From Saccostrea cucullata (lineage: Eukaryota), in assembly GCF_032062105.1 (NCBI RefSeq), contig NW_026936630.1, positions 1 to 64,000 on the forward strand: a stretch of 64,000 bases of DNA, given 5' to 3'. Position numbers and translations under genes: made by a program. Under the pieces are notes generated by a model that was not told the origin of the DNA, made no database searches, and was given only the letters and a program-made list of their open reading frames with translations. This document shows, one piece after another, positions 28,053 to 57,550 of this stretch (positions within the stretch are counted from its first letter, which is position 1; the number at the start of each line of letters is the position of its first letter).

Positions 28053-28896
28053 CAATGTATTTATTTCACCAACTTAACGTTTGGAGCAGAGGAATTATGT
28101 ATGTATTTTTACTATTATTCATTAGAGCCCCAAAACCACAACCCGTGATCATGTGGTCATGAAATTATTCAAATTTTGGAATAGGTACCATTCCTCATCA
28201 TAACTATGTTCTGGGTTTTTTCCTTAATGCCAAGGAGAAGAGGAGAAGATTTTAAAAGAAACAAGGCGTTTTCATTAAATCTATTTATAATAAATTTGGG
28301 GCCTGTAAATATTGACCGTGGGTCATGAATTTAAAATTTGGGTAGAGGACACAATACTTATTATAATCATACCACCATTTGGTGCTTCATGTTTGGGAGC
28401 AAGAAAAAGATTTTTAAATTTTTTAATTTTGAGGGTTTTAAGCCCAAACCCTCAGGTCCCAGGGGCACAGGGTCAAGAAATCACAAATTCTTCTTTTCCC
28501 ACCCATATATGGTTTAGTGGTTTCATAGAAGAAGTTAAAAATGCACAATAACCCACACAAAACAATAGCAATAGTCACCTGAGGAAAATTGCACATCAAT
28601 AGGAAAATAACCATATTTTTAGTATGTTTGCTTAATACCAAGGGGCAAAGAAATTTTTAAAATTTAAAAAAAAAAATTTCACATACATAAAAATCCCCAC
28701 CCAGGGACTTTGAATTTCATCTTTTGGTAGGCTCACCTGCTCATAATAACCATGCAATAAGTTTACATTTTTATAAGGATGCTAACCAAAAATAATTATG
28801 AATAACCCTGAAAATCTAAAATCTATAATCAAATTTGCTGTATTTAAACAAAATTGGAATGTATTAGATATTAAGAAAATTGAAATTTAACAATAC

Positions 28897-29080
28897 CCTC
28901 AGAGTGAAGTACTGTATGCAGAGCTGTCCGTCCATGGTTGTTTCTGATGTTAAAATCTGCTCCCCCCTCTAACAGCCTCTCTACAACCACTTCTTCATTT
29001 TGTTCACAAAAGTAGAGAAAAGGTGTTGTCCTTAAGCATTTATTACGTTTAGTTAAGCTCCTGGGGTGAACTTTAAAATC
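28897..29080 (-). pseudogene. Ankyrin-repeat coding fragment (probable exon of a degraded or mis-assembled gene extending to about 30070)
   Basis: Minus strand reads RTTPFLYFCEQNEEVVVERLLEGGADFNIRNNHGRTALHTV; nearby LLVAGYDP (ORF 29298-29540) and YKNGADVR (about 29890). Confidence 0.55.
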
Positions 29081-32000
29081 TGAAAGTAAGCTGCGATGTG
29101 AGATCTGTTTCTTAAAAATGTAGCATCATTTTGTCGCTCCCAAAATTTTGGGAAAAAAGACTGTTGCATATAAATGTTGTTCCTTTCTCCTGAAGCAGCA
29201 CGTTAAGAAAGGAAAGATCATCTAAAGAATAATTTTTCACTTAGTTTTGTACTGATAATTTCAAATGAAAATTGGAAACTAAAGATTATGATTTCAATCA
29301 ACAGATAATATAAAAGATATAAAGAAATTCCCACATGACACATTTCTCTATTATATTTTCCTCTTTAGAAAACGGATCATATCCTGCTACTAGTAACTTT
29401 CGGAAGTCCTCTGATTTGTTTAAGAGAAAGACATAACGGACTGTTGCCTTTTTCCCTCCTTTAAATTTGGATTCATATTGACTGACAAAAGAATTTGAAG
29501 TACAGTCCTTCGGCTTCGGTTCAATGTTGAATCTGTACAAAAAATATGCTTTAAATTTTTCTTTTTTTAATTTTATTTCAAAATAAATGTTATTTCAACT
29601 TACCTACCTCAGTCCTGGATTAGAAAGACGACTCCTTTATTTGAGAACAGTTTCTTTAGTGATACAAATTTGGGGTTGGACGAGGCTTTAAAAAAGTGTA
29701 TTAAAATATCTTTAATAATATTTTAATTTTGATTCCCATTTCAAGCTCTCTCTTGTCATTTAATTTTTTAAAGGTCTGCTTTTCCAGACTAAAAAAAGAG
29801 GACTAATCAAATTGTCTATATAATGGTGATAAATTAACCTTTCTTTAAATTCTTCTGTAAAGGGCATCTTTGGTTTCTCCGAATGTCTAACATCAGCACC
29901 ATTTTTATATGACAGTGTACAATGTTATCCCAAACAATGTGTGATATTGAATCGGTAACGTGTTACTCATTTAACAGGATTACAGTTTCCCCGGCATGGG
30001 AGTTTCTCAAAATAATTGTCTTTTTTCAAATATGATAATTTCCTTTAGCAAGGGCAGTAACCCTTGTTGACAAACTTTACCCCATACGAATTAAAATAGT
30101 TTATTTTTGCAAAGAACTTTTTTTAGATAAATTTTTAAACTTTTTTTTTCAATTGGTTTTAAAAACCCAAGGTTTATGATTATATAAATGGTAAAAATAT
30201 GTATAGCTCTATTATTATATAACTGTTTTTCTTTTTTAATCGGGTTTATGCAATCTGCAATCGACAGGATAAAAACGAAAAGGATTTGCACATTTTGTTG
30301 TTTCACCAGTAATCACAACTTATTTCTTCTACATCACTTAAATCAAGTTTTATGGAATTTTTTGAAAAGTTGGTTTATCAATGAAATATATGGAGATAAA
30401 GAAAAAATTTGAGCTCAAAAGTCCATTCAAACAGTACAAATCAGGAGCAAGAAAAGGGACTTCTTAAACATTAGAGGTGGGATCAGGTGTCACGGAGGAG
30501 TAGCATCCCCCCCCGTGTGCTCCCTGTCATGATGGGAAACAACGATAAAATTCTTTGACAATTCATTTTTTGAATAATGGCCTAACAATTATTAGGAAAA
30601 ACGTCAGTCAGCATTTGATCAAATAATTTATGGATTACTTTGAGCAGGGGGTTCGCGTACAGGTTATCATTTTTACCGAAATTATCAGTAAATAAAAAAT
30701 ACGTATAAAATACATATAATAATTGTCAATATAGGTATGACGTATTTTTGTATTAACTGAATATTTCGGTAAAATTGATAGGTACGCCAACTTCTGTGCT
30801 TTGAGAGTGAAATCTAAATATAGTTGACGGACATCAGCTCGTACCAAAAACAATATTAGTGAAGTAAGTATGTATGAACTCTGAACTATGAACTAGTCGT
30901 TTCGGAGTTTATTTAGAAAATTAATTAAATTATAAGTGCAGATGTCACACATATCTTTCAGCAGATATTTAATAACCGATTCGTTTCTTATCTTACCTTA
31001 TTTTTGAGATATTGATTGACATATATATTCCATGCCCTACAGTGTCAATGCAGAATATCCCAATCCTTACAGACACATTTTTCTGTCCATTATGAGACTT
31101 TTAAATATTTAGTTAAGATATAATTAAGTGGACTTCAGTGTGTATCTTTTAAAAAAATATCTAAAAATTTTAAGTGTAAATAGGCTTGAAAATTGAAAAA
31201 GTTTTTCCCCAATCACACTGCATCTGGATAGGAAAAATTGCGCAGTTAAGACAATTTAAGAAAAAAAATCACAAACACGTTTTTTATTCAGTATTTAAAA
31301 AAGATTTTCATTCGTTCAAGTCATTCATGTAATTTATTTACTAGAAAAATATGAAATGGTGATGCTTACCTTAATATTGCAAAGAAATCATTACCAAAAT
31401 GCAAACATGAAAAAATCATGTCATGTTTACGTTTTTTAAGGACGGAAAATCCTATGACGTCACACGAGCTGATTAATTTTCTTAAATGTATATTATTGTT
31501 CCAAACAATCCATCACGGTATGACAACTGGATATTTAATTAAGAGACGCAATTGAATTCATTTTTTCTAATGTTTAAGTTTAACAATCTGAAACCAATAT
31601 ATCAGTTTAAAAATTCTTTCCCGTGTTCATTTATGGAATAAATTACCTATGTATGTACGTTTTTCACCAACTGTAGAAAAACTTGTTAAAATGTAGAAAA
31701 GTTATCATGCTTGCGACTAAACTGTGTAAGTAACCCTCAATTCTATACATATTCCATACGTCCTTAAATTTTCTATATACAAGTAATATATTTCTTATGT
31801 AACTACAGACTGTAGCATTATTAAAGAATTTAAGCTACGGTATTGTACAATCATTGGCGTCGGAAACAAAAGGGAGAGGGCTAAGTGATAGACAAGAGAA
31901 AAAAAATTCAAACGTACACAAACATCTGAGAAGCAAAAAAAAAAAAAGGGAAAAAGTGCCTATTGTCCAAACACAAAAAAAACTATTTTCGGGAGGGAGG

Positions 32001-33014
32001 CGACAAAATTACGAATTTAACTAATATCATGTATTATAAAGAAAAAAAAATATTTCGGGGGTTGCATTTATAAACGATTCATGGGATTATTTTTCAAAAA
32101 TCAAGCTAATCCATTCATATTAAGTCCTCGATAAAAAGCGTGTTTAAACACTTCAACATGCTCGAGGAGAAAGACTAAAATCGTTTACTTTTGGTTTCAG
32201 TGGGAGTTTTTTTACTCACAAATTGAAGTAAAACAAGATAATATTAATAAATCTGTAGAAATTCATTCTTCAAAGTAAATGTTCCAAAGATGTTTATTAA
32301 TAAAAAAAATAATAAAAAAAATCATGTAAACAATAATAATTAATATAATAGAAATACCAGCTTTCAACATGCGCAGTCTATAGAGCTTCCAGGTATGAAA
32401 GATCATCGAAACATTTTAGCGCAATTTGACGTCATTTTAATTGTGACGTTTTTATATTTAAGAAATAAGGTATCTTTTTTTTTTAGTTTTATTGGGATGT
32501 AAAAGGGTTGGTCAGTAATCAATAGGGTATTTTCATGACATTCAATTTGAAATCATATGAAAAGTAAACCGGATACCTATATTAAATTTGATATTGATTT
32601 AAAGAAGAGGCCATGAACTTACTAATTACCGTTTTCTGAGAGACTGTAGGCAACCTGGATACATTTCCTTTGTCGAATATGAAAAAACTCCGGTCCAATA
32701 TTCATGAATGGTTTTCTTATTTTTCATTGAAAATGACAGTTCAAAATACAGTTTTTCATCTTGTTTACCTACAAATTATGCCCCGAAACACCTTTTGACC
32801 AAGCTAAAGTTGTAAAGCATCAATAAAGGAATTTATTTCTCAAATTTGATAAATCTGTAGGCACCTTTCATTTACTAGATCTTGACCTTAAATGAAACAT
32901 TGAAATGTAAAAACAAATAAGCGAAGACAGAAAAAGATAGAAGAGTTTATATCAGTATATCTTTACCAATTTTAAAATGCTTTTGTTCTTTATTATTGAA
33001 TGGGCTGTTTACAG

Positions 33015-36000
33015 GTAATGACGTCGCTATTGTTGGAACTACAGTGGAATTATGTATCTATTGTTCACGAAAACAACGCATACGGCCTTCATGGCGCAGA
33101 AACATTGCAAGTGGTTTTGAAAAAACATGGAATATGCATCCGCACCATAAATGGATTTAATACAACATATGGGGTTGAATTATCTCTTCTTAATCAAATC
33201 ATTAAAAACGTCACTTCGCCAGCAGATGGCGCAGTCAGTGGCATACTGTTTTTTGGTGGTCAAATTTCCGCCGAAAAATTTTTGACGGCCCTTGCAGACC
33301 TGAAACTCGGTGGAGATACGCCATCAGTAATATTTTCAGAAGGTGCCGGAACTTCGAATGTTGTGTTTAATGATAGAACTTTACCAGCATCTAGGGGAAA
33401 CCTTGTTGTGAGTCCTACATATCAACCGGTGGAAGAATTTCTGACGCACTGGAGAAACATTTTTCAAAACGAGACAGTGTTAGCTCAAGAGAAGATAACG
33501 AATCCTTGGCTTGAGGACGTATTAAGAGAAATTAAAACTTGTGGTAACTGCGAGTTTCCCACGGTAGAAGATATAAATGATGCCGCATCAAACAATATCT
33601 ACGTAAAATTTGCTCTAGAAACTGTTTGCATGTTTGCGAAAGCTTTAAAAGATTCTCGACAATTATTGTGTTCTAACGAAAACTGCAGTTCCCTTCAGGC
33701 TAATGCCATGAATATTTTTTCAAATTCTTTAAAATCTGTCGACGTGAACGTGTCTGTGGAGTTTTCAGCAATTCTTCCTACAAATATTCGATTAAAATTT
33801 GACAAAAATGGTGATATTGACTCCAATGTAAAGAGAACTGAGTTGTCGGTATATAACCACCGAAAATGTGTTAAAGACAATTCAAAATTTTGTTTTGTCC
33901 AGGTATGTATCTAGTGTTCATACGATGAAAAAAGATTTAGCAAATGAAATGATTTATACTTACAGAGTTCCAAATGAGTAAAAAAAAATCCGAGAGAGGG
34001 ACGCTAAACAACAAACAAAAAAATAGAGATCATGGCGGTTGTGGTCGGTCAACAGGGGATGCTTAAATCCCAGTCACATTTCCAAAAACGACCAGCGGCC
34101 GACGGGTTTGAAGCAAAAATGGGATTCTTCGGATGACAGTCGGCAGATCATCGGCCATTGTCTTGCCCGATTTTGACTTCTTTTTTTGTCGGCCGACCAA
34201 TTTTGTGTCCATCGGTCCAAGTTATAATTTTTTCTGCGTCGGTGGCCGATTTCTTCAATTGACGTTATCTGTCGACCAACCTTCGATCATCGTCCGACCA
34301 TCGGTGGTCAGTTTATTAAGTCGGTTGTCCGTCGTTCGACAAAAAGGGTGTCCAAAATTTCTGCCGACGGTTAAAATCTAACTGTAGCTCTAGGCTCAAT
34401 GATCGGGCGACGATTGGCCGACTTATAAATATTTAACATAGTAAAGATGCATAACACAATACTAAATTTTGATGCATGGATTGATGTATATTTTTTGAAC
34501 GGAAATAACATAGATAATTGATCCGTAATATATAAAGGAATCTTAAGTATTCTTTGCTGCTAAGATTTGCATAATTTGTCGTTTTTATGCAATTCTATAC
34601 AATTTTGCACACATTATCAACATTGAGTCACAATTTTATAAAATTCTGCCACTTTGCCTTGCAAACATTACTCACGTCACCTATCTGAATATAGATCTAT
34701 GAAAAAATATTGCTGGTTTCTAAAGAAAAAAGATTTTTTGTGTTATTTATCCAAGTCATCGGTGTTCTTAAGAATTAATGTGACTGCTCCTGTCGCCCGA
34801 TACTTGTGTCGGCCGATCAAATTCTTGCAGCCGACAAGACCAGAAAAATTTAGTCGCCCGACCATCAGCTTAAATGTGACCTAGGCATTACTCTCCCTAG
34901 GCACCTGATCCCACCTCTGGAATTTCCAGGGGTCCGCATTTATGCCCTCTTCACATATATACATTGTTTAACGATTTTTTTCAAGATCAATCACCACTCC
35001 TTATCTGCATCTTTTACATTACAACAATCTGAATGACATCTTTATCACTATTGATTAATCATTGTTTTTTGAATAATTTTCCTTCCTCGTTATTTTTTTC
35101 TTAGGTTGAAGAGGTTGTATACCCCTTTTTATATTTAAATCTTTCTTTTTTTAAATCTTCACATTTGGAATCTAACAGAAACATACATGAAGTGGTAATG
35201 TGAGCAAAAACTGAGCTTCCACAAATGTTAGTAGTGTGATTCTTTGATACATTTAAATGAACTGCATTGAAAATAATTCCCGTCTCCAGTTTTTTCTTAA
35301 AAGTAGATTTTAAGTTCCCAATTGATGCTCTTTCCATAATTTTTTTTTACAAACATACTGGGGTTTATTTGTTTTTGTATCAAGTGTCTTTTTTTGATCA
35401 AAAAATCCTTTCGCAGACATTTTTTGTGTTGGATTTTGGGGTTAAAGAGTTATTTTAAAAAGATTTAATTTTTGCAGGTGGCGAATTACTTTGACGATAA
35501 AATTTCTATAAATAGAACTTTACTGAAAGATTACGACCAAAAAGGTGACGAAAGAAGCTTCCACAAAGCCCAGTGTAAACAAGGCGACATCTGTACGTCC
35601 TGTATTGGAAACAACGAACACTTATACTACAAACCCGGAGACTTGATCATTGTTGCGGCATTCCCTATCCATAACGTCGGCACTGAACCTTTACGGTGTG
35701 GAGGATTGCGAAGTAATACGGGTCTTGACGTAGCTTTGGCCATAGAACACGCCGTGGAAACGATTAATAAAGATTCAACCATTTTCAGTGGTACTTCAAT
35801 CGGTTTCATAATTTTAGATACTTGTAATGACCCTTTAATCATTCAGCAACGCGTACTACATCTATTTCGGAAGGATGGATATCCAAGACTTCCGCCAGAT
35901 ATCGCAGATAGGATTCTTGGTTACGTTGGATCGTTAGGGAGTACACCGACTATTGCAATGGTCTCTGTCACAAAGAAGCTTGAAGGAAAGCCCCAGGTAT

Positions 36001-39000
36001 TCACGAATATAGATTAATTTTCTTCTTAATTTTTTTTCTCGATAAAAAAAAAATCAATAAATAAGAGTTTTGTTATCTAAGTATATAGTGTGATTTTTCT
36101 TTGCTTGGGTATTTTTTTTACTAGTTTTTCTTTTTTATAATTCCCATAAATTTTCGACATCGATAGTTCCGAAGGTTCTCTATTCAAAAACAAAGTTTAC
36201 ATATTGCGTTTTAAACAATTGATTCTTTTCTTCATTGTGCGAATTTTACATTGTTTATTTGAAAAATCCTGTCTCATTTTTATTGCTGAAAGGTTGGATG
36301 TTGTTCAACGTCTTCAGTGCTTTCCAACAAAGAACAGTATCCAAACTTTGTACGAGTTTCAACGCCACTTGATAGGACAGCAGATACGATGGTTCAAGTA
36401 GCCAAAAAACTAAATGCAAAATACATTCAAATCATATATAGCTCCGGATCCTATGGTGAAGTTGGAAAAAATGCCATCATATCGAGTGCGAGGAACTACG
36501 GTGTCTGTGTAGCAAACTCGATTGAAGTGCCTGAAAAATCTAACTATAACACGGTTCTAGACAAGCTTCGAGTTAAACCCTCGGCCAAAGTGGTTTTGAC
36601 TTTTCTTCGTTCTCACGTTGGGCCTCATGTTATGCAGGTTACGGCAAATAGGATGCAAGCAGAGGGTGAGTTTTACTTTATAGCATCAGAAACTCTTGGC
36701 ACGCGCACACAGTACCTTATTCCAAGACTGAGAGGGACTGTATCCGTTGCGCAGGTGATGCCACAAGATACCTCCTATTTGCAATATTTGAGAACCAAGT
36801 CGCCAAAACCAACAGATGACAATGCTTGGCTTCTTAATATAATTCAAAGTCGCCAACGATGCTACTTTCCGTGGAGCTTTAATAAAAGTGATGCTCTGAC
36901 TCGACAATGTGGATCCAGTGACCATATTTTTAATAACGCTAGCCTTTTGGTCGACCCATGGGCACCATACCTTTTAAATGCTGCTCTAGCCTTATTGAAG
37001 GGTTCCGCTAGTGCATTGCGCGATATATGCCAAACAACGAAAACAATTTGTTCAGGATATTCTGATACAAACAAGGTTCTGCAACACATAAAAAATGTCA
37101 AACTTGACCTCAACCAAAACGGTTCATCAGTTCCAGTCTTTGATGAAAACGGAAATGGGATATATGGTCATACTATATATGCCATAGTATCTGAAGAAGG
37201 AACATTGTCTTTCAAAATGGTAAGCTTTGGACAAACCTCGTGTAATACTTAGAACATAAAGTACTAAGTACTTCTAGGCCTATATAGTCTCCTTTTTCAA
37301 GAAAAACTGGTTATTTTGTAATATGAAACTTTCATTAGATAGGACATTGGTCACATTCAGCCGGTTTAACTTTTGGTCATGAAGACGAAATTTTTCCGGG
37401 TTATTCTGGTCAGACGGAGTGTCCAAATCCACAGGACTGTACATTCTGCAACAGTTTCCTGCGGACAGTTGGCACTAGAAGTGATGTCGGTGCAGTGACG
37501 TCATCTGAACTGTAAGTAGACTGAAGATTGTTTTACGATTATTGATTAAAGATTGCTTTACCAGTATCATTCATACTAGTATCTGTATCATAAAGCAGGA
37601 TATCTTAATTAACACATGTAATTAATATGTTAACGTTTGAAAAACTGCAAATGAGAAAATTGAATTATTTTATGCAAAAGAAAAATATTTTGATAATCAT
37701 ATTAAATATTATTAATACAAGTTAACAATGTAATTTACAATAAATATAAATCACAAGATTTAGAATGTGTATCAATTACCAGTTTACGAACGTGACATTC
37801 AATTGAAAAATTACACGTTTTTTGTAATATAATGAACACTTTTCGTAAAAAAAAAAAAAATTTAAAATACAAATTTATATATATACGCTTTTGAACCGGA
37901 TACCTTTGGAATGCTCTTATCAAGAAATAAGAGTGCTGTATGTTAAAAGAAGAAAAAAATTACTGATTTTAAGTAAAATATTGTATTTTGTCTTACCCAG
38001 GTTATCAACGGCAAATATGTCTCTGATTGTAGCTGTATCGGTCACAAGCTTTCTTGCTATTTTATTCATCGGTCTTTTTTCGTACCAATGTTATCAAAAA
38101 CGTCAAGGTAATTATCAATTTGCTATCATTAAATTTACCACAAAAAAATGAATTTAGAAATGAGAATATATGTACATGTCTCAAATTTTTGTACTTCTTT
38201 TAATTTTAAATGTATGCGTTTTCTCAATTAAGTTTAGGAGAAAAATTATTATTCTGTATAGTCTTAAAATTTTGGCGTACAGCAAAGCTAGATTTTAGGG
38301 TAAAATAAACACGAATATGAAAAGCTTTCATTTAGTAGACACTGACTAATACAACTGGCAAAAAATCTTAGGTTTCTCAAGTACCAGTGCATCAGTTTAA
38401 CCAATGCTGCATTGGTCGATTTTATTGGCATATTGAAAAAGGGACAGGCTAAATTATGTTTTCTTTCCAGATGTTTTGTCCCTTTTTTATTTATGCAAAT
38501 AGAAATACGTGTTAATTACATAAAGAATGTATTTCTTTTTGAAAAATTATTTTGAAGCTTGCTTGGAAGAGAGATGTTTGAAATGACATTTTTTTTAAAG
38601 TTAAGTACATTGTTAAGGTCAAACGACACAATCCCCAAAAATATATAATTTTTCCCAAGAATTTATCACTGAAATCTACAATGTAGGTACTTAAACAAGT
38701 TTCCAGGCATTCGGTCCAGATACCAAAATTTGATATTTGTTATCTTATAGGGGTAATCTTCTGAATTTTTGGTGTATTTATATTTAAAAACATATTAAAA
38801 ACAATGTAAAAATCCCAAGAGAATGACAATTATGCATACTTTTTCCTATAATACCAAGAAATGCAAAACATATATTTGGGGAAGGTTCTATTGACTGAAA
38901 GAACAAATGGATGGCACCTGCTTAAAAAAATTGTCAGCGCCATTGAATTGTTTTTAGCCCTAAAAAGTAAAATAAAAATGAATACAGTTTCTCATTTCAG

Positions 39001-39235
39001 CTAATCTCAAATTCTTTTCAAAGAGAAAACTCTTATTGATGTGAAAGCCTTCTTTTAAATGAAGAAAAGGGTAATACAATGTTCGTCAATTTCAGAAGCT
39101 GCAGCAAATCCTTATATTACACCTAGTGGCATGGAGGGGATCGGAAATGAGTGTTATTTGGAGGTCCGCGACATGGAAAGATTTAACTCAAATAACGAGA
39201 TGGATTGTATGGGATATAATTTTTACGAAACTTGA
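33015..39235 (+). CDS. Tandem Venus-flytrap single-pass receptor, copy A (5' exons not found in window). Exons 33015-33902, 35478-35996, 36293-37219, 37339-37511, 38001-38107, 39096-39235
   Basis: Class C GPCR ectodomain motifs twice (WNYVSIVHENNAYG, NPWL, YKPGDLII, GFIILDTC, YPNFVRVS, FDENGNG); one hydrophobic helix LIVAVSVTSFLAILFIGLF; stop at 39233-39235. All junctions are GT-AG and phase-consistent (917 codons). Confidence 0.85.
34066..34887. mobile_element. MITE with TTA TSD (PIF/Harbinger-like) inserted in a PLE 3' motif within an intron
   Basis: GGGGATGCTTA|AATCCCAGTCACATTT...AAATGTGACCTAGGCA|TTACTCTCCCTAGGCACCTGATCC. Confidence 0.65.
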
Positions 39236-39859
39236 TTGCTTCTTCCATATTTTATATATATACTGAAAATTGATTCCTTATTACGTTTTATATAAATATA
39301 GCTTTTGAATACCTACATTTTTTTTTCAATTTATTTTGAACAACCTAATTCTAAAAATACGTCATGAATAAATTGCATCATTTTTTTATGTATGGCATTT
39401 TAAACAATTATTCTCATTCTCAATTATATATTGTATAATACACTTTAAATTCTTTTTTAAGTGCAAAATGGTATAATGTAACTCATCTTTTACAATAGAT
39501 AGAAACCCCAAAGACATCATTAACTAATTAAAGGAAATACTAATCATGTTGATTTCTATTTTTATAAATTAATAAAATATTTTGAACAATTGGAAATATG
39601 TACTTTTTCAAACGTTGTGTTTGTTCAGTTTAGGATTCGTATTAATTAAAGTTTAGGCTTCTTCATGTAATTGACAGCTTTTTTTTTTTTTTAAAACAAA
39701 ATACGAAAATGGAACTCTTCATTTGTTTTCGTTCATTTGTAAAATACAGTAGGTAAAAATGCCTGTCTTAGTTGTCTCCATAAAAAGACGTCATGTAATA
39801 TAACAACAAAAACTTATTATAAACTTGATGATTTCAACTTTTCTATCGTCAATTTCTTA

Positions 39860-39862
<3 letters not shown>

Positions 39863-39940
<78 letters not shown>
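39863..39940. repeat. (TA)n microsatellite
   Basis: Direct reading. Confidence 0.95.
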
Positions 39941-39943
<3 letters not shown>

Positions 39944-40377
39944 ATGAAAATTATCGCCTGTAAATGAGGTTTATGTTTCCAAGTTTATTCGAAAAATAAG
40001 AACATGCTCTAATTACTGACAATTCTAAAACGAAAGCAACTATAAACAAACATATCAATAGTCTCATTTAAAGTCAATATTTTGCAATTTATATGGTCAA
40101 TACAATTTACTTGTCAACAAAAACAATCTTACTGAAGTTGAATGTTGAAAAACATTATTCATACAAATTGCTAGGCTTTAATTATCACGCTTTTGTCCGA
40201 TCATGGCATAGAGCACACGGTGAGTGTGACCGGTGGACACAGGATGCTTGCTCCTCCATGGCACATGATCCAAACTCAGATGTCTTTAGATGCCTCTGTT
40301 TGTTCTGTTCCCATTTTGTATTGTTTTCATTTACTGTTTGTCATCATCATATTTCAATGATAAATGATATAGAAATA

Positions 40378-40383
<6 letters not shown>

Positions 40384-40442
<59 letters not shown>
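40384..40442. repeat. (TC)n microsatellite
   Basis: Direct reading. Confidence 0.95.
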
Positions 40443-40445
<3 letters not shown>

Positions 40446-41202
40446 TATCACATATGTAGTAAGGGAATTAATAATACAGCTATTGCAACCAAAAATTTAA
40501 AAAAAAATACGCAAGTTATGTTTGCAACAGCTGCAAAGGTTCTAATTACTAGCAACCAAAGAAAGCATTTTATTATCTAAATAAGCTTCATGAGTGGAAA
40601 AAAATATGATCACAGAATAATTATTTGTTAGCTTGGACATTAAATTAAAAAAAAATTCTCCTATTTTCAAATTTGTATCTTCGAGACAAATATACGTAAA
40701 GGAGAAATCCTTAAATGTATATAAGTAAACCTTTTCTATAAGGTAGTAATAAAAACAGAAAACGAAGGAATTTGTATATTTATTATATTTATGATCAATG
40801 TTCCAGACCACCATCCATTGATTTACAATAGAAACGATTATAACTATTATCATATCCTCCTAAAATTTAAATAAACAAGATATCAAGGGCGATCCATAAA
40901 CATCTTTGAGGTTTAATTCAGTTTTTAAAAAATCTTAATATGTTCATTTATGCACGACGACTTATTTCGAGAATGACGGTTAAGGTTTAAGAAACAGAGA
41001 AACGGTGAACGCTTTACGGGTTTTAAATATTTTCCTTGCGACATCCACCAGAAGATTTGATTTGGGTGAGGCATCGTCTTTTTGTCCCGGGGGAGGAGAA
41101 AGGGAAATATTAGAATTCTCAAATTTCCCCGTCCAGATAATCAGAAGAAAAGTAAATGGACTGGAGGTAAGAGTCTTCATGTGTAACGCACGAAAGATCT
41201 CG

Positions 41203-44200
41203 ATGTCTATTCAGTAAGAAATTTCACTTCCTGGTTTCGATTTTTGCTCTGGGTTGCTTCTCATGTTTTTGAATGTCATTTAATCTTCTTTCATTTGACG
41301 TATTCACTTATGCAAATAAATGTTGTTTCATTTGTTTGACACGTTATACAAAGAATGTTTTAAAAATGTCATTTCAAACACACAATATTATCCTTAATTT
41401 ATCATGATATATTTTATCGTTGTTTCAGAGTAATATCTTTGGTTATTGTGAACGTGATGTTGAGCTCTGCGACCTTGACCCCGGTAATATCAGTGTCAGG
41501 TGACGTTTACTTGGCGGGAATATTTACCATAAAATCCTCAACAACATTTGGACATGAATGCAATGGTCCCGTATCCATTACCTCAGTAATGGGACTAGAA
41601 GCAGTCAAGTGGGCAGTTCGTCGACTTAATCAGCACAAATTCATTCCCGGGGTTCAATTAGGTAACTTTAAAATTTTTTTTTAAACCTGAAGTTTCTCTA
41701 AGCGACCTTGGATGAAACAAAAATGCCAGATGCCTCTCTTTTATTAAAAAATAAATAGTTCAGGATTTAGTTAAAATTGAATTTTTACAGACTTGTCATA
41801 CTGTATGAATTCAGAACGCAGAACTAAATAAATTATCGTAAAATGACACTGGATTTTTATGATAATAAAAGTTAATTGTTTATTATAAATAAATATTCGA
41901 AGCGTTGTATAGGAATACATGGGAATTCTCTTAACCATCTTTTTGCAATAAGTAAACATCTTTTAAGGGTCAATTCGTTTGTTTTTTCTTTTCAAAATCA
42001 TGCACCTAATATGTTTATGTTGGGCCTCATTAGGGGTTTTAAGTTAGAATCAATGTATTTGTATATTGGATTTTCAATTCTTGAGTAGAAAATAAGGATA
42101 ACTGTCGGTCTTTTATGGTTTCTCTTTAATCTACTTTATCTAGTTTCTTGGATTGGAGTCTCAAATATTGATTTTTATATTCTCAAAATTGGATAGAAAA
42201 TCTAATTAATATAGAATGTAAACATGAGAAACATTTATACGTATATAACTGGCTTTCCTTTGAATAAAGGATATGGAGATAACGAACAGTATTCAATATC
42301 ACTTAAAATGACGACAGTAACTCTACTGGTTTGTACTATAACAAAGGAAAAGAAAAGTAGCATTTGAACTTGAAACATTGCAGCAGCAATACATTATAAA
42401 ATATCATTGGTTTAGTCTTTTTCTTGTCAAGATTTATTGTTATCAGATAAAAACTGTAGGAATAGCATTTTAAAAATATTTCAAAGAAATTTCTATTTTT
42501 TGATAACCATGGCAACACCTTTCATCGAAATCAAAAACCGATAAACAGAATTATTTATCTTAGTCAATAGTGTAGTCTACTTGTGTGCCAAGTTATATTG
42601 AAATCAGACTAAAACTGTAAGAAAAGTAGCATTCTGAAAAATCAAAGAATTTTCTATATTTAGTACCATGGCAACACCGTTCATCGAAATCAAAAAAACG
42701 ATATACAGAATACAGAATTATGTATCTTCGTGTAGTCTACTTCTGTGCAAAGAAACATTGAAATCAGACCAAAACTGTAGGAGGAGTAGCATTGTGAAAA
42801 ATTGTTTACAGACAGACGGACGGACGGACTACGAACACATTACTATCTCATATGCTCTTCTGGCCTTCGACCAGTAGAGCTAAAATCTGTAATTTATTAT
42901 GAAAATATTTGGTTTGTCACAGGTTTGATTGCTTATCCAACATGTTTATCTGAAGAGTTGGCCGGATATAGAGCAGTGGAAATTTCCACAGCAATCAAGG
43001 AAAAATCAGAAAACATCATAGGTAGGAGCAAACAGTAAAACATGTTAACCGTGAGTGTTGGAATGTCATGTTTTATACTGGGTCATATTTTATTACAAGG
43101 GTACAATTTCTTGACTGTTAAGAGTCTAATTTATTATTTTCTAAATATTGGCCCATAGATTACAGTTTAGAATGAGAAACAGGAATTTCCTTCGAAAAAC
43201 CCCTTTTAAATGATGATATGGATACGAAAATACAGAAATGAGTGTAAACAAACATAAAAAGCTGACATTCTTGCGAGATATTTCAAAATCTATTTATATA
43301 AATTATATCATTTCTTTAAAATCTTCGAATTTGACCGCAATATATATGAAGAAAATGAACATTAAACTCGCTGATCTTTAAAGGAAAGATTTTTGTAAAA
43401 CACGTGTTACCCAACTTAAATTCAGGGATATTACACATACATTTGGATCCAAGTTAAACATATAAAAAATTAATTTAGTTTAGCAATTTATTCCTTCATT
43501 TGACGAATTCATTTTTTGCAGGAATCGTCGGAGCGGAGAGGAGTTCCGATTCCGAATCAATGTCAACAGTTCTCGCGAGACTTCCTCGTTCCATTGCGCC
43601 ACCTATGATCTCATATTCTTCTACCTCTGTGTCGCTTAGTGATAAGTCGACGTTTCCCAACTTCTTCAGGACAATTTATTCAGATAAAATACAAGTCGAG
43701 GTTAACGTTACTTAAGAGTGTCACTTATCTGTAGTTTTAGTTATTCATTAATATAAAAAATACAACAATTTTTCTTTTTATTAAATTGTCTTTAAATTTA
43801 AGGGCAAATAACAGAAAACGTGTTTTCTACCAGTTTGCATTATGCATATAAGCTTAAGTCATACATAGAATTCTTACGACCATTTTTTAAGATAAGGATA
43901 GATGGAAAGATATGCTTATTTAATTTTACTGCCCTTTGCATATTTAACTGCTGCCCATTGCATATTATTTTCTTTGACAGGTTATAATCACTCTAATGTT
44001 GGAATTACATTGGAACTACATATCTATTGTGCGCGAGAACAACGCATACGGTCGACATGGTGCTGAAGCATTGAAAACACAACTCCTTAATCACGGAATT
44101 TGCATTCGCACCGTTAATGGTTTCAATACTACAAACGGAGTTCAAATATCAGTTCTTAGTCAAATAATTTCAGATGTCACCTTACCAAAAGGTGGCGCAG

Positions 44201-47200
44201 TCAGCGGAATAGTTTTCTTTGGAGGACAGTCGTCTGCTGAGAAATTGTTGACGGCCACGAAGGACCTTAATCTCGGAGAAGACACACCATCAATCATTTT
44301 TTCAGAAGGTGTTGGAATGTCTAAAGAGGTGTTTAAAGCAGAGACTATTGCGGCATCAAGAGGAAATCTTGTAGTTAGCCCTAAATATCAACCGGTGGAT
44401 AGTTTCCTGGAACACTGGAAAGCTATTTTTACGAATAAAACATTGCTATTATACGAAATACAAACCAATCCTTGGTTAAAGGATGTTTTCTTTGATGTAA
44501 AAGGGTGTTCTCACGAAGATTTGACTTGTATCGAACCAACAGAACAAGAAATAGATGATTTTATTTCAAAGAATATCTATATCAAGTTTGCTGTGGATGC
44601 AGTATCTATGTTTGCAAAAGCTTTAAAAAATTCAAAGAATGAAGTTTGCAAGAACGAATCTTGCTCATCTCTTCTTGAAGATGGAATAGAAAACTTATCG
44701 AAAGCAGTAAGAGATATAGAGGTTAACTCAACGACAGAGTTTGAATCAATGTTTAAACTGGATCAAAGACTTATTTTTGACGAAAATGGTAATATTCAAC
44801 CACAAAAGAATGCAGAAGTATTCTCAGTGTATAATCACCGCAGATGTTTGGAGGACGAATCCAAGTACTGTTTTGTTAGGGTAATATTACCTTTACACAT
44901 CTCATCAATGGATAAAGTTCAAAATATTTTGAAATTTTGAGATTAACGAAATAATGATAAATTTTGTAATAAAAAAAACTGCATGTTTTTGTAGGTGGCA
45001 AGTTTTTCTGATAACAAAATAGCAATAAACCAATCTCTGTTAAAAGATTATGACCAAGCTGGAAAGGAAAGAAGTAGTTATCACAAAGCTCAATGTAAAC
45101 CGGGCAACATATGTACAAATTGCCTACATGACGACGAGCAAATATACTACAAACCTGGAGACCTCATTATTGTTGCTGCTTTCGCAATACATAACGTTGG
45201 CACGAAGCCTCTAACATGTGGAGGGTTGAGAAGCAACGTTGGTCTTGATGTAGCACTGACAGTTGAACATGCTGTCGACCAAATAAATCAAAACAAAACC
45301 ATTTTCGATGGCACGTCATTTGGATTCATCATTCTAGATACTTGCAATGATCCCCTTGTAATTCAGGAGAGGGTGCTCCGTCTATTCAGAGAGGATGGTT
45401 ATCCGAGACTGCCTTCTGATATAAAGGACCGAATCCTGGGATTTGTCGGATCCTTGGGAAGTACTCCTACTTTGGCCATGGTTTCGGTCACGAAAGAGCT
45501 GCAAGGAAAACCACAGGTTAAATTTCCTTCTATCTCTAAAGATTTTTTCATATTTTTATTGGCGATGTATAAAAGGCTTGTTAAATAATATATTGTATTA
45601 TCCTTGTCTACATGTTGCTGCTTTCATGATCACTGAATGATGACAGATAAAGGTGAACATCAGGAAAAAGCTGGCGAGCCGATAGGGTTTTTTTTATTTT
45701 GTCTGTAAGTGGGTATGTGTTTCACTTTGTTTTAAACTAATGTTTCATTTCTTGTAATTTTTAGGTCGGATGCTGTTCAACAACTCCAGAATTGAACAAT
45801 AGAGACTTGTATCCAAATTTTATACGTGTTTCAACCTCACTAGAACACACGGCAGACACAATGGTTCAATTAGCGAAACAACTCAACGCCTTATACATTC
45901 AGGTTATATACAGTTCTGGATTCTACAGAGAAGATGGAAAAGATGTCATTATATCTAGTGCAAAGAAACATGACATCTGTGTGGCAAATACTATAGAAGT
46001 ACCTGAGAAGTCTAACTATTTCAATGTACTGGAGAAGCTTCGAGTCAAACCTTCGGCCAAGGTGGTTTTGACTTTTCTTCGTTCTCATGTTGGACCTATC
46101 GTAATGAAGGCAATCACAGACGAAATGCAATCGGGTGACGAGTTTCACTTTATAGGTTCAGAGACTGTTGGTACTCGCAAGCAGTACCTTATCCCCCGAT
46201 TAAAAGGGACATTATCTGTAGCACAAGAAATGAACCAAATTCCTTCTTATCTCCAGTTTTTACAGACAAAGACTCCCAAACCAACCGATGATAATTCTTG
46301 GCTTCTTAACGCAATTCAAAGCCGTCAAGGATGCTATTACCCATGGAGTTTCAACAAATCCAAAACTTTGTCCAGAGAATGTGGACCAAATGACCATTTA
46401 ACTAAGAACGACAGCGCCCTTTTGGACCCTTGGACACCATATCTTTACAATGCTGTTCTTGCTCTTCTAAAAGGTTCGGCAACAGCTTTGCGCGAGATTT
46501 GCCTGACAACGTCGAAAATATGCGCAGATTATTCAGATACGAAGAGGGTTTTACAACATATAAAAAATGTCCACCTAGATCTCGATCAAAATGATTTACC
46601 TGTACCCGTTTTTGATGAAAACGGAAATGGAAAATATGGGCATCGGATTTATCGTATTGTTTCTGAAGAAGGGGAGCTGTCCTATGAATTGGTAAGTAAG
46701 AAAAGAATTTTTTATAACAGAATACAACAACATGTACGCTGTATACATGTACATGTGTATACTCGGTACAATTAAATCAAATCAGAACTCTGAATTTTGC
46801 ACGTAACGTTTTTGAGACAATGTCTTACTTGAAAGGAGAATTAAAACTTGCTACTGTCTTACGACAAACAAATCCATACAACTGTATTTGTTTATGTGGC
46901 TTGAGTACAATAAGGATGTTGAAAAAAATCTTTCCATTGCATATCGGATATTCTCTCCTCCTGCCACCATATCCCACCTCTGATGTTTTGGAGGTCTGTG
47001 TTTGCTCTGCTCCTGTTTTGTATTGTTTTATGGACTTTTGATCTTGAATACTGTTCGTTATCTCCTTATGTTTCATTCACTAGCTAATATTGTACAGGAA
47101 AATACATTTGTGTGATGAATAATTTGTAAATCACTGGTGTTAAGTCTAATAATTATTGCAACATATTAAAAATCTTATTTTGTTTGTTTTACTTGATTCA

Positions 47201-47864
47201 TGAAATCCTTTTGGCGGTAAGTTTCATATAGATACTTACTAGGATGCAGATATTTATATTATCTTTTTACTAATCTTCATTTTTCTTCATTTTCCAACAA
47301 GAAATTTATAAAAATTACTAGATTCCTTGTCTGTAATATGATTCACAGGAATTGTAGATTTAAAACTAATTTAGCTTTTGCAAGCCATCATTAATTCTGC
47401 AATTTCTCTATATAGGTCGGACGTAAATTATTCGAACCCAATCAAGTGGCCTAGTATTTAATCAAAAGAATGAAATACTTCCAGAATATTCTGTAGAAAC
47501 AGAATGTCCGAATCCTACAGACTGTAAACTCTGCCGAGAATTTTTGAACAAGCCACAAACCGACGATGATTCTTCAGACTTGTGAGTTGGGTGAATGTAA
47601 TACTTTTATCTTCCTGTTTAAACATAAGTTGACAATTGTTATAAGATTTGATATGGATTCATTACGAGAACTTAATTGAAAACGTATCTACATTATATTT
47701 TAACTTTAAAGGAAACCAAAGACATTACACCTATTGAAGGTTGTTTTCTCTATATTTTAGGTCCTTAATGCAGATTTTGCTTATTGTGGGAATACGTATT
47801 ACCAGCTTTTTGGCCATTCTCTTCGCAGTTCTATTTTTGCGTCTGTAGTGGGAAAAAAGGCGAG
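41203..47864 (+). CDS. Tandem Venus-flytrap receptor, copy B. Exons 41203-41213, 41429-41661, 42923-43021, 43522-43700, 43981-44880, 44995-45516, 45765-46691, 47416-47581 (frameshifted), 47761-47864 (TM, in-frame TAG)
   Basis: Signal-peptide-like MSIQVISLVIVNVMLSSA; GDVYLAGIF, IPGVQLG, GIVGAERSS, ISYSSTSVSLSDKSTFPNFFRTIYSD; 957 uninterrupted codons to 46691; exon-by-exon paralogy with copy A. Confidence 0.85.
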
Positions 47865-52379: not shown

Positions 52380-53080
52380 AAAATTTAAATAGTGTCTCAG
52401 TAATCGGATAACAATATTAAAAAATGGTAAAAAGAAAACACAAAAATCCTCAGTTAAGCTTTAGCGCTTTCATTTTCAATCTTCAGAAGCTTATAATAGT
52501 ATCATAGTAACAGTGATTATGACGTCATGTTAAGCGGAACGTTAAATGTTTATTATGACGTCATAGATACAATATGACAAAAGTACGGGGAAATCACAAG
52601 TAATTTATAAAACACTATTAAGTTTTGGCTGAAAAATACTAATAAAATGTTTTTCTTTTTCCCGTCTCTGGATATCGGTGGCACAACTGAGTTTATAGAA
52701 AGGGAAAATTCTGAATTGTTTTTTACCACACGCCTCCAGGTGCGAACTTAATTGAATTTGTCTGTATTCGGGTGTACTAATGTGTTGCTTATGTACACGT
52801 ACACGGGCACGGAGAGTGTTGCCGGTTTCACCAATATAATATTCCTTGCATCCAGGACATGTGATGACATAAATGACATTTTTTGTATCGCATGACATGT
52901 TTTCTTTAACTCTAAATTCACGCCCATTGAAATTATAGCTGGTCCCTTCTGTAATGTATTCACATGTACCGCATCTAGGGTTCTTACACTTAGAGACTGT
53001 ATAAGTATGGTCGTTGAATTTGGAAGAACAAAGTATTCTCTTTAGGTTTTTGGGTTGACGTTTACTGTTGATAAAACGAC

Positions 53081-55291
53081 AACAAGTTACTGTCTAAGGG
53101 TCTAAAATACACCCCTACGCCTCAAGTAAATAATCAAGAGCTTAAAACGGATATAAAAGCTTATACTCGGCGACTCAGGCTACGTGAATATTTTCATGAA
53201 AGTGATACCAGTGAATCTGATTCCGAGTCTACAGACGCAGAAGAAACAGACCTTGTTAGAAACAAATCCAAGTTTAACCCAAAACGAGGAAGAAATAAAA
53301 CTTTAGATGCTGTTTGCGACACATTGGAAAATATTCATTTCCCAAATAAACCCAGGACTATTAAACCAAACCTTTCTAAGGAAGAAGAAAAGGCTCTTAA
53401 AAACCTCAGAGATGACCCTACCATCATAATCAAAGAGGCCGATAAAGGAGGCGGAGTCGTCCTTATGAATAAGGATTTTTACAAAAGTAAAATTTTACAA
53501 ATGTTGCAAGACAATAATTTTTATGAAAAATTGCGCAACTGTCATGAGAAGAAAACAATTACAAAAATAAAAAACTTAGTATATGGACCACTATCGGAGG
53601 GCTTAACAGATAAGGAAAAGGACTACCTGACAAACTTTGAATTCCGAGAGAGTCAATTCTATGGTTTACCTAAAGTGCACAAGTCTAAAATTATAAAGGA
53701 TGCCATAAAAGAGCAAAATAGTATATGTATTACATGTGCTGATCCCGCTGATTTAAGCTTCAGACCAATTGTAGGAGGACCGAACTCTTCAACGCAAAGA
53801 CTGAGTCATTTATTGGATATACTTTTAAAACCATATTGTCAAAAAGTACCCAGCTTTGTGAGAGACGATCTTGATTTTATAAATCATTTACCTACTCATG
53901 TCACCTCTAACACCAAACTTGTCACACTGGATGTTGTAAGTTTGTATACAAATATTCCTACAGAATTGGGATTGCTAGCTGTCAAATTCTGGACTGAAAA
54001 TTATCCCGATGTTCTAAACAACAGGTTTCAACGGGACTTCATCCTAGAGGCTCTAAAATTAATTCTAGATAACAATACGTTTGAGTTTGCAGACCATCAT
54101 TACCTCCAAATTAAGGGAACAGCAATGGGGACAAAAGTCGCACCTACCTATGCAACATTAACCCTTGGTTATCTAGAACATAAATTACATGATCAACTGT
54201 GTACGTTGTGGGGGATAGAATCTGCAAACAAAATACGGTCTAAATGGAAAAGATTTTTAGACGATTGTTTTATCTTATGGGAGGAGGATGTCGATAAACT
54301 AACGGAGTTTTATGATTTACTTAACCAAATGAATTCGGATATTAAATTCACGATGGAAACAGATGATTTGCAAATGCCATTCCTCGATGTTCTTGTAACA
54401 AAGGATAATACCAGCTTAAATACGGATATTTACTATAAACCAACCGACATACACCAATATCTGCATTTTGGATCAAGCCATCCCCATCACACTAAAACAG
54501 CTATACCATATAACCTCGCAAGAAGGATATGCACCATTGTGAGTAATACCAATATCAGGGATATTCGACTGGAGGAATTAAAATTATATTTATTAAACCA
54601 AAAATATCCAGAACAACTTGTAGATAATGGTATAAAGAAAGCCAAGGAGTGCGATAGAAGTCAGTTACTTTTAAACATACGACGTGCGAATGACGTTGAA
54701 ATAATTCCATTTGTGCACACGCATAACCCGAGAAATCAAAACGTGAGTTCAATTATTCATGAATTAAACAACCTACTTACAGAGGACGAACAAACGAAAA
54801 ACGTATACAAGAACTCTCGTTTTATCAACAGTAAACGCCAATCCAAAAACCTAAAGAGAATACTTTGTTCTTCCCAATTCAACGACCATACTTATACAGT
54901 CTCTAAGTGTAAGAACCCTAGATGCGGTACATGTGAATACATTACAGAAGGGACCAGCTATAATTTCAATGGGCGTGAATTTAGAGTTAAAGAAAACATG
55001 TCATGCGATACAAAAAATGTCATTTATGTCATCACATGTCCTGGATGCAAGGAATATTATATTGGTGAAACCGGCAACACTCTCCGTGCCCGTGTACGTG
55101 TACATAAGCAACACATTAGTACACCCGAATACAGACAAATTCAATTAAGTTCGCACCTGGAGGCGTGTGGTAAAAAACAATTCAGAATTTTCCCTTTCTA
55201 TAAACTCAGTTGTGCCACCGATATCCAGAGACGGGAAAAAGAAAAACATTTTATTAGTATTTTTCAGCCAAAACTTAATAGTGTTTTATAA
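53081..55291 (+). CDS. PLE reverse transcriptase + Cys-rich linker + GIY-YIG endonuclease; frame open from the inversion junction, no start codon at the junction
   Basis: LLSKGLKYTPTP, ADKGG, FYGLPKVHK, RPIV, LDVVSLYTNIP, GTAMG, RFLDD, CKNPRCGTC, VIYVITCPGCKEYYIGET. Confidence 0.92.
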   Translation, partial: NKLLSKGLKYTPTPQVNNQELKTDIKAYTRRLRLREYFHESDTSESDSESTDAEETDLVRNKSKFNPKRGRNKTLDAVCDTLENIHFPNKPRTIKPNLSKEEEKALKNLRDDPTIIIKEADKGGGVVLMNKDFYKSKILQMLQDNNFYEKLRNCHEKKTITKIKNLVYGPLSEGLTDKEKDYLTNFEFRESQFYGLPKVHKSKIIKDAIKEQNSICITCADPADLSFRPIVGGPNSSTQRLSHLLDILLKPYCQKVPSFVRDDLDFINHLPTHVTSNTKLVTLDVVSLYTNIPTELGLLAVKFWTENYPDVLNNRFQRDFILEALKLILDNNTFEFADHHYLQIKGTAMGTKVAPTYATLTLGYLEHKLHDQLCTLWGIESANKIRSKWKRFLDDCFILWEEDVDKLTEFYDLLNQMNSDIKFTMETDDLQMPFLDVLVTKDNTSLNTDIYYKPTDIHQYLHFGSSHPHHTKTAIPYNLARRICTIVSNTNIRDIRLEELKLYLLNQKYPEQLVDNGIKKAKECDRSQLLLNIRRANDVEIIPFVHTHNPRNQNVSSIIHELNNLLTEDEQTKNVYKNSRFINSKRQSKNLKRILCSSQFNDHTYTVSKCKNPRCGTCEYITEGTSYNFNGREFRVKENMSCDTKNVIYVITCPGCKEYYIGETGNTLRARVRVHKQHISTPEYRQIQLSSHLEACGKKQFRIFPFYKLSCATDIQRREKEKHFISIFQPKLNSVL

Positions 55292-55402
55292 ATTACTTGT
55301 GATTTCCCCGTACTTTTGTCATATTGTATCTATGACGTCATAATAAACATTTAACGTTCCGCTTAACATGACGTCATAATCACTGTTACTATGATACTAT
55401 TA

Positions 55403-56533: not shown

Positions 56534-57550
56534 CAATCCAGGCATCCATTTTTTGGTTTGTTTCATCTGTCCTTAAGCAATTGAATTTTTGAAATGGACT
56601 TAAAGTTTACAACGTTTTTCGGAGAACATGTAGAAAATATCCTGATTATAAAAGTTTCACTTTGTTTAATGCATTGCTTTCTTATGATCATACAGATAGT
56701 TGTCAACCGCAGGATCCTTACTATCTGACCGTCCAGCATGAGGGAAATCGAAATACAGAGAGGATTAATGCTGAAGAACCCGGAAGCGAATATCATTCTG
56801 GCAATGGCTTCTCACCCCTTTGATGAATACATAGATCCCTTTGACCACTTCACACTATGTAAAGAGTTCTTATATCAGTTATTCTTACATGTATGCAGTC
56901 CGAGTGATCAGGCATTATATCTGAACTGGAGAGAAATATTGAAATATACCATACATTACGTGATGAATTTGTTTACACTGTATTCTTTTAGTAAGGCAAA
57001 GATGAATTACTGGTAACTGAACACTTTATTTGATTGCACTTTCCTAATTTTGGTTACTGATTTTAACAGGGCAGGAAAACATTTGTCCCCTGAATTTTAT
57101 CTAGTCAGGTGCTGTACCCCAATCGGCTATATGGCCACCGGAGCTTGAATCTGTTAGAAATAATATTGTAATGAGGAGGTAGTTCTCTTCAAAAATTAAA
57201 ACTTTATATTAATTGAAGCCAAGGGAAAGATCAAGTTGGTTTTACTTTAAGAGTACTTGCCTAGTTATCTCCTGAAGTTTACTTCTGAACTGATGAGAGT
57301 TGTACTGCATGGGTAGGATATATAAATATATATTATTATAACAGTAACTTGATCCGAAGGGTCGTATCACGTCGAGTTGACAGGCGCAGATCATCAGATC
57401 AAACACCATGGATTGTGTAAAATTTTGACAATACCGAACATGATGTGACTTCACAAATGAAATAACAAGCCGGGTTGCGAAAGGTCAAGCGGCGCATTCG
57501 GCGTACGCCGGTATGACAAATGAAATCCTACCGATGTTAGTGTAGCGAGT

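What the first reader, a model, noticed from the sequence alone, without database searches (positions are those of the whole stretch)
33015..47864. Receptor pair with two tandem mGluR-type Venus flytrap domains, a single TM helix and no 7TM or enzymatic domain
Seen: both paralogs splice into VFT1, a short Cys linker (AQCKQGDICTSC), VFT2, a second Cys linker (TECPNPQDCTFC) and one TM helix. Copy A then stops after a tail of about 54 aa, and no 7TM exons appear anywhere in the window. Known: class C GPCRs couple one VFT to a 7TM; Venus kinase receptors and receptor guanylyl cyclases couple one VFT to an enzyme; NPR-C has one VFT and a short tail. Inference: this is a distinct amino-acid or chemosensing receptor, co-receptor or decoy class that would be auto-annotated as 'mGluR-like'. 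I cannot confirm that it is undescribed.
Basis: partly seen in the sequence, partly recalled or inferred. Interest (0 to 1): 0.85.

Follow-up and report, generated by a model that had tools for sequence, protein, structure and literature searches.

The report
Double-flytrap receptors that lost their GPCR
These two oyster genes belong to an apparently undescribed family, shared by molluscs and a brachiopod, of probable amino-acid sensors that carry two glutamate-receptor-type binding domains but have replaced the usual G-protein-activating part with one membrane anchor and a short tyrosine-motif tail; both copies in this particular contig are damaged.

Summary
The architecture is real: two mGluR-type Venus flytraps (VFTs), three-cysteine knuckles, one TM helix, short tail, no 7TM. 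The window is a Saccostrea cucullata contig (RefSeq 'uncharacterized' LOC134245962 and LOC134245964). Corrections: here copy A lacks exons 1-3 (signal peptide, start of VFT1), and copy B has an 8-nt frameshift and a stop after its TM. B's tail exon lies at 56696-56823, outside the finding. Another contig of the assembly and S. echinata carry undamaged copies. The family is widespread: 37 representatives analysed (bivalves, gastropods, Lingula). Intron-free assembled contigs of relatives end TM, tail, stop, 3' flank. Each VFT position is one clade, sister to VFTs of five-VFT class C GPCRs, so 7TM loss is the likely origin. Both VFTs keep the alpha-amino-acid residues and lose the two glutamate-specific ones. 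19 of 30 short-tail members have Y-[ILV]-x-[PVI] within 45 residues of the membrane (shuffles: 1.2). Best reading: a non-glutamate amino-acid sensor signalling through a phosphotyrosine/SH2 site; ligand and signalling are inferred. I found no paper describing it. No reads of this species were examined. The scan had noted A's tyrosine-rich tail only on this window.

The parts
32521..32521 (+). Left edge of copy A: homology to intron 3 of the other contigs begins here; exons 1-3 of A are missing upstream (mis-join or rearranged allele)
33015..33902 (+). Copy A exon 4: VFT1 lobe 2 and C-terminal part
   Evidence: PF01094 E 1e-10; splice sites
35478..35996 (+). Copy A exon 5: end of VFT1, first Cys knuckle (C-x5-C-x2-C), start of VFT2
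36293..37219 (+). Copy A exon 6: body of VFT2
   Evidence: PF01094 E 1.4e-21
37339..37511 (+). Copy A exon 7: end of VFT2, second Cys knuckle, Ser/Thr-rich stalk
38001..38107 (+). Copy A exon 8: single TM helix and basic stop-transfer residues
39096..39235 (+). Copy A exon 9: cytoplasmic tail with the family motif (NPYITP) and stop; AATAAA at 39367 and 39571
   Evidence: S. echinata orthologue P0171
41156..41166 (+). Copy B first coding exon as implied by the RefSeq model (start codon); not independently tested
   Evidence: P0178 N-terminus and sequence
41429..41661 (+). Copy B exon 1: signal-peptide-like stretch and start of VFT1
42923..43021 (+). Copy B exon 2 (VFT1)
43522..43700 (+). Copy B exon 3 (VFT1 lobe 1, with the S165- and T188-equivalent residues)
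   Evidence: PF01094 E 5e-8
43981..44880 (+). Copy B exon 4 (VFT1)
44995..45516 (+). Copy B exon 5: first Cys knuckle, start of VFT2
45765..46691 (+). Copy B exon 6: body of VFT2
47416..47581 (+). Copy B exon 7: second Cys knuckle and stalk; 8-nt insertion near 47424-47431 shifts the frame in this contig
   Evidence: alignment to C18933
47761..47864 (+). Copy B exon 8: TM helix; in-frame TAG at 47846-47848 in this contig (TGG in C18933)
56696..56823 (+). Copy B exon 9: cytoplasmic tail (DPYYLTV motif) and stop, beyond an 8.8-kb intron that holds Penelope-like elements
   Evidence: 55% identical to the tail of S. echinata P0172, E 3e-13 pairwise; phase and acceptor

Best explanation
A single-pass cell-surface receptor for small L-amino acids other than glutamate, derived from a multi-VFT class C GPCR that lost its 7TM. 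Shown: architecture, one origin, purifying selection, retained alpha-amino-acid pocket residues in both VFTs, loss of the R78/K409 equivalents, a conserved acidic-Y-[ILV]-x-[PVI] motif about 13-20 residues inside the membrane in the subfamily of these genes. Inferred: amino-acid binding closes the flytraps; the Cys knuckle, tied to lobe 2 as the CRD is in mGluRs, passes the movement on within a dimer or cluster; a Src-type or receptor kinase phosphorylates the tail tyrosine, which recruits an SH2 protein (PLC-gamma, SHP2 or Crk type), replacing G-protein coupling. Two pockets with different side-chain residues (Tyr/Phe in VFT1, Trp in VFT2 at the K409 position) would widen the ligand range or require two ligands. 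The two alleles in this contig are probably non-functional or mis-assembled.
For: Single TM and stop in orthologues and in intron-free contigs with 3' flanks. S165/T188/D208/Y236/D-E318 equivalents kept in 20-26 of 26 short-tail sequences at each position in both VFTs, K409 replaced in all and R78 replaced by non-arginine residues in nearly all; the same pattern is read as binding of another amino acid in class IV mGluRs (PMC6307864). Motif in 19 of 30 tails against 1.2 in shuffles, maximum 6 of 2000, 14 of the 19 with D/E in the three residues before Tyr; compare PDGFR-beta Y1021 ADNDpYIIPLPD bound by PLC-gamma and the +3 Pro/Leu need of Crk (PMC3514216; PMC7337045). Tail disordered in the model, pLDDT under 50. 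dN/dS 0.08-0.2. VKRs show that a VFT can drive a single-pass receptor on amino-acid binding (PMC3703292).
Against: No ligand, phosphorylation, dimerisation or tissue data. Y-x-x-[ILV] versions also fit an endocytic YxxPhi signal. The long-tail subfamily mostly lacks the juxtamembrane motif (1 of 14). How closure of the distal VFT1 would reach the membrane through VFT2 and a flexible stalk (pLDDT under 50 at 940-958) is not explained. SH2 specificities come from mammals.
Confidence: 0.45

Rival explanations
1. Co-receptor or modulator: the protein pairs through its VFTs with a related 7TM partner (for example the five-VFT class C GPCRs), tunes its ligand range or trafficking, and the partner signals through G proteins.
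For: VFT1 is sister to the first VFT of five-VFT GPCRs (100/97); class C receptors are obligate VFT dimers and heterodimers (established knowledge); hydrophobic positions of helices B and C are largely kept; a candidate multi-VFT 7TM gene lies on C17217 of the same genome.
Against: A two-VFT ectodomain would not sit in register with a five-VFT one at VFT1; a conserved phosphotyrosine-type motif suggests its own output; the single-pass genes outnumber the candidate partners in this assembly.
Confidence: 0.25
2. Clearance, scavenging or uptake receptor like NPR-C: binds amino acids or peptides and the tyrosine motif is an AP-2 sorting signal.
For: Tails as short as 19 aa (P0006, P0160); forms such as YLTV, YVTI, YSTI fit YxxPhi; NPR-C is a VFT, one TM and a short tail (established knowledge).
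Against: 15 of the 19 motifs have Pro at +3, which is not a YxxPhi residue; endocytosis is a poor way to take up free amino acids.
Confidence: 0.15
3. The VFTs act as protein-interaction or adhesion modules (cell-cell or immune recognition) and small-molecule binding is vestigial.
For: Tandem expansion, copy turnover and broken alleles resemble bivalve immune receptor families; several iGluR and mGluR VFTs bind proteins (established knowledge).
Against: Pocket residues are better conserved in the single-pass family than in most VFTs of the five-VFT GPCRs; dN/dS is low, with no sign of diversifying selection.
Confidence: 0.12
4. Annotation artefact: truncated or mis-predicted 7TM receptors, or pseudogenes.
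For: Both copies in this contig are damaged; no reads of this species were examined.
Against: Four intron-free contigs of relatives run from start to stop after one TM, with up to 1.4 kb of 3' flank; chromosome-scale assemblies give the same models; no 7tm_3 on the carrying contigs.
Confidence: 0.03

Closest known systems
Multi-VFT class C GPCRs of molluscs (five VFT + 7TM, e.g. Argopecten XP_069135753, Physella XP_059178375) and deuterostome invertebrates (two to four VFT + 7TM; Branchiostoma, Saccoglossus, Anneissia); database proteins, no paper found
   Same: Tandem mGluR-type VFTs, the same short Cys knuckle after each VFT, no NCD3G domain, sister VFT clades
   Different: They keep the 7TM; this family has one TM and a tyrosine-motif tail
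Metabotropic glutamate receptors, including class IV / Drosophila mXR
   Same: VFT fold (Foldseek E 1e-33, TM-score up to 0.89 by target), alpha-amino-acid residues; loss of R78/K409 as in class IV (PMC6307864)
   Different: One VFT, nine-Cys CRD and 7TM in mGluRs; separate clade in the tree
Venus kinase receptors (PMC3703292)
   Same: VFT, single TM, amino-acid ligand, phosphotyrosine signalling
   Different: One VFT and an intrinsic tyrosine kinase; none here
NPR-C (natriuretic peptide clearance receptor)
   Same: VFT-type ectodomain, single TM, short tail without enzyme; third hit by features in the ESM Atlas
   Different: One VFT of another subfamily, peptide ligand between protomers; best sequence and structure matches here are mGluRs
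Schistosome SmGBP (PMC3206071) and Entamoeba EhVFT (PMC12965686)
   Same: VFT proteins lacking the 7TM
   Different: Single VFT; SmGBP (488 aa) has no CRD or C-terminal TM and binds glutamate; EhVFT is GPI-anchored; neither has a cytoplasmic tail

Membership tests
Class C GPCR / mGluR | mGluR-type VFT ligand-binding domain | tested here: met
   PF01094; PDB best hits mGlu8/4/7, E 1e-40; Foldseek
Class C GPCR / mGluR | 7TM domain (PF00003) | tested here: not met
   none in proteins, on the contig or in intron-free contigs
Class C GPCR / mGluR | Nine-cysteine CRD (PF07562) | tested here: not met
   three-Cys knuckle only; no NCD3G hit
mGluR classes I-III | R78 and K409 for the glutamate side chain | tested here: not met
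Class C GPCR / mGluR | Single TM homologous to TM1 of the 7TM | tested here: inconclusive
   hhalign probability 22% and 10%, generic hydrophobicity
Class C GPCR / mGluR | Dimerisation through VFT lobe 1; G-protein coupling | not testable with these tools
   only hydrophobic pattern of helices B and C inspected
Venus kinase receptor | Intracellular tyrosine kinase domain | tested here: not met
   tails of 19-460 aa; no kinase family in those scanned
Receptor guanylyl cyclase / NPR-C | Single natriuretic-receptor-type VFT, with or without cyclase | tested here: not met
   two VFTs, nearest to mGluRs; no cyclase. NPR sequences were not in the tree
Two-VFT single-pass family (defined here) | VFT1 and VFT2 each fall in the family clades; one TM; no 7TM | tested here: met
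   P0153 (copy A on C18933) in both clades, 100/92 and 96/92
SH2-docking (non-catalytic tyrosine-phosphorylated) receptors | Tail tyrosine is phosphorylated and binds an SH2 domain | not testable with these tools
   motif enrichment only

The most novel reading that the evidence does not exclude
A lophotrochozoan receptor family in which a class C GPCR ectodomain with two ligand pockets was moved onto a non-catalytic phosphotyrosine tail: an amino-acid sensor that signals through SH2 proteins instead of G proteins or an intrinsic enzyme, possibly integrating two ligands in one chain, and missed by GPCR surveys because they filter on the 7TM.
Probability: 0.4. Interest if true: 0.82.

Novelty: new variant of a known kind. 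Interest (0 to 1): 0.68.

Why it matters
VFT domains are known coupled to a 7TM, an ion channel, a kinase or a cyclase. A conserved family coupling two VFTs to a bare tyrosine-motif tail would add a further output mode, shared by molluscs and a brachiopod and expanded in bivalves and abalone. It offers testable candidates for amino-acid sensing in these animals. [quoted passage not shown]

Tried and rejected
7TM exons further along the contig: none. A's exons 1-3 inverted elsewhere on the contig: none. VFT1 and VFT2 arising by duplication within the family: rejected, p-AU 5.6e-5. TM as remnant of TM1: inconclusive. Paper searches for tandem or multiple VFT, mollusc, single-pass or 7TM-less receptors found only VKR, SmGBP, EhVFT and unrelated papers; the library lacks most subscription papers. 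TM calls are Kyte-Doolittle windows, not a trained predictor; P0017 and P0161 have no TM (probably incomplete models).

Full report
Setting. The window is the first 64 kb of contig C18767 (73,401 bp) of a 1.17-Gb assembly with redundant haplotype-like contigs. RefSeq proteins on a contig of exactly this length identify it as Saccostrea cucullata: LOC134245962 is copy A and LOC134245964 is copy B, both 'uncharacterized'. The window has no N.

Checking the observation. Copy A has six exons from 33015 to 39235 with AG/GT boundaries and consistent phases, including 38107 to 39096; RefSeq's P0152 is the same 916-aa model. The large exons of A and B hit ANF_receptor, and a genome-wide PF00003 search finds nothing on this contig or on C4370, C18933, C566, C4245, C17675, C5764, C10463 or C17630, which carry the close paralogues. 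Three things differ from the finding. First, A lacks exons 1-3 on this contig: similarity to C18933 and C4370 ends at 32521, while those contigs continue into intron 3 and exon 3. C18933 holds both a full A and an inverted 5' fragment whose exon 4 region is 99.4% identical to the window's, so a mis-join is as likely as a true rearrangement. Second, B here has an 8-nt insertion at the start of exon 7 and TGG>TAG just after the TM; C18933 has neither, and RefSeq's P0178 detours round the first and ends at the second. As written, B would give a secreted two-VFT protein or a decayed transcript. Third, B has a tail exon at 56696-56823, found by motif search and confirmed against S. echinata P0172. 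dN/dS over exons 4-6 is 0.13 between A alleles, 0.20 between B alleles, 0.13-0.15 between A and B, and 0.08-0.09 against a single oyster co-orthologue, so the genes were under purifying selection and any loss is recent.

Is the single TM real? Four Logan contigs (L017-L020, 3.4-4.7 kb) encode full proteins of 1069-1131 aa that end after one TM and a short tail. L019 and L020 match the window's exons 1-7 end to end without introns and carry 150 and 1,419 nt after the stop; I infer they are transcripts, though I did not look up the runs. L017 clusters with C. gigas LOC105329806. Chromosome-scale assemblies of S. echinata, Solemya, Mactra, Haliotis, Littorina and Pecten give the same architecture. 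No reads of S. cucullata were examined. The joined window model was left out of all searches.

Family and origin. A search with exon 6 returned 845 representatives at E 0.001 or better. The best 150 hold some 40 proteins with two VFTs and one TM, nine with five VFTs (7TM in eight; one model ends early), and deuterostome proteins with two to four VFTs and a 7TM. Named single-pass members come from bivalves, gastropods and the brachiopod Lingula. In trees of separate VFTs, VFT1 and VFT2 of the single-pass proteins each form one clade (100/92 and 96/92), split into a short-tail and a long-tail subfamily that both span gastropods and bivalves. VFT1 is sister to the first VFT of the five-VFT GPCRs (100/97), then to the first VFT of hemichordate and crinoid four-VFT GPCRs; VFT2 groups with VFTs 2-5 (97/93); mGluRs lie outside. 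A single clade of VFT1 plus VFT2 is rejected. Since all surrounding branches have a 7TM, loss of the 7TM from a multi-VFT GPCR is the simplest history (inference; rooted on two CaSR/V2R-like domains; only four mGluR-like rows; fragmentary rows left out). The Cys knuckle (C-x5-C-x2-C in A and B) follows every VFT in both groups, and the lobe-2 cysteine that bonds to the CRD in mGluRs (numbering from my own knowledge) is present in 73 of 74 single-pass VFTs. Whether the TM descends from TM1 is undecided.

Structure. AlphaFold2 of P0153 with 81 sequences gives pLDDT 87, pTM 0.79, two complete flytrap folds, one TM helix, and a disordered stalk and tail. Best matches are mGlu2/3/4/5/8 ectodomains. 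The relative pose of the two VFTs was not examined.

Ligand pocket. In the 26 short-tail proteins the S165, T188, D208, Y236 and D/E318 equivalents are kept in 20, 23, 24, 23 and 24 sequences (VFT1) and 23, 22, 19, 26 and 23 (VFT2). K409 becomes Tyr/Phe in VFT1 and Trp in VFT2; the R78 position is variable in VFT1 and mostly aliphatic in VFT2. [quoted passage not shown] A hydrophobic or aromatic amino acid is the natural guess for VFT2 (inference).

Tail. The tails do not align, yet 19 of 30 short-tail members carry Y-[ILV]-x-[PVI] within 45 residues of the TM (15 with Pro), most at +13 to +20, against 1.2 in shuffles; several others carry it further out. The sequences are related, so this shows retention rather than independent gains. 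A has NPYITP, B has DPYYLTV. Acidic residues before Tyr, a hydrophobic +1 and Pro at +3 resemble the PLC-gamma site of PDGFR-beta and the Crk requirement. The long-tail subfamily mostly lacks the juxtamembrane copy.

Mechanism and verdict. Most likely (0.45) a non-glutamate amino-acid receptor whose tail is phosphorylated in trans and docks an SH2 protein; alternatives are co-receptor of a 7TM relative (0.25), clearance receptor (0.15), adhesion or immune module (0.12), artefact (0.03). It is not a member of the class C GPCRs, VKRs or NPR family by their defining features. The proteins exist in databases as uncharacterised or 'mGluR-like' (an ESM Atlas cluster of 105 members lists ANF_receptor and no 7tm_3), and seven paper searches found no description of them, within the library's limits. 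The family is a solid finding; the function is inferred, and this contig's two alleles are poor starting material compared with C18933 or S. echinata. Interest 0.68.

Noticed in passing
G000:C17217:71483-93387 (- strand): Several VFT-type exons in a row followed by 7tm_3 at 82900-83622, and a second VFT plus 7tm_3 at 71483-73717: candidate multi-VFT class C GPCR in this genome. Five-VFT 7TM receptors of about 2,800 aa recur across molluscs and seem undescribed too.
   Followed up: partly
G000:C566:1386977-1429480, C4245, C17675, C5764, C10463, C17630: About ten further single-pass-type paralogue loci (some allelic, some with stops), in tandem clusters without 7tm_3.
   Followed up: partly
G000:C18933:31317-33930 (+): Inverted 5' fragment of copy A (exons 1-4), annotated by RefSeq as a 413-aa 'mgl-1'; its exon 4 region is 99.4% identical to the window's A, perhaps the window allele's missing 5' end.
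   Followed up: partly
window 52608-56530: Penelope-like retroelement (738-aa frame at 53075-55288 with C-terminal GIY-YIG, inverted GIY-YIG copy at 52608-53093) and TA tracts, all inside the last intron of copy B.
   Followed up: partly
window 22017-22240 and 23186-23395 (+): Exons of a CYYR1/Shisa-like small single-pass protein with a PPxY-rich tail (weak PF10873).
   Followed up: no
window 28874-29125 (-): Ankyrin-repeat exon of a neighbouring gene.
   Followed up: no
window 3440-5003: 75-bp tandem repeat, about 21 copies, 92% match.
   Followed up: no
window 42402-42800: About 156-160-bp repeat in B intron 1, also arrayed on C18933 43058-44315.
   Followed up: no
window 62064-62403: Inverted 90% copy of the A intron 3 segment that spans the 32521 breakpoint; may be a repeat end involved in the rearrangement.
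   Followed up: no
window 63466-63891 (-): Frame that looks like the C-terminal part of a LINE-type ORF2 fragment (by eye; Pfam gave only a weak unrelated hit).
   Followed up: no
P0143: A one-VFT single-pass model nested in the long-tail VFT2 clade: loss of VFT1 or an incomplete model.
   Followed up: no
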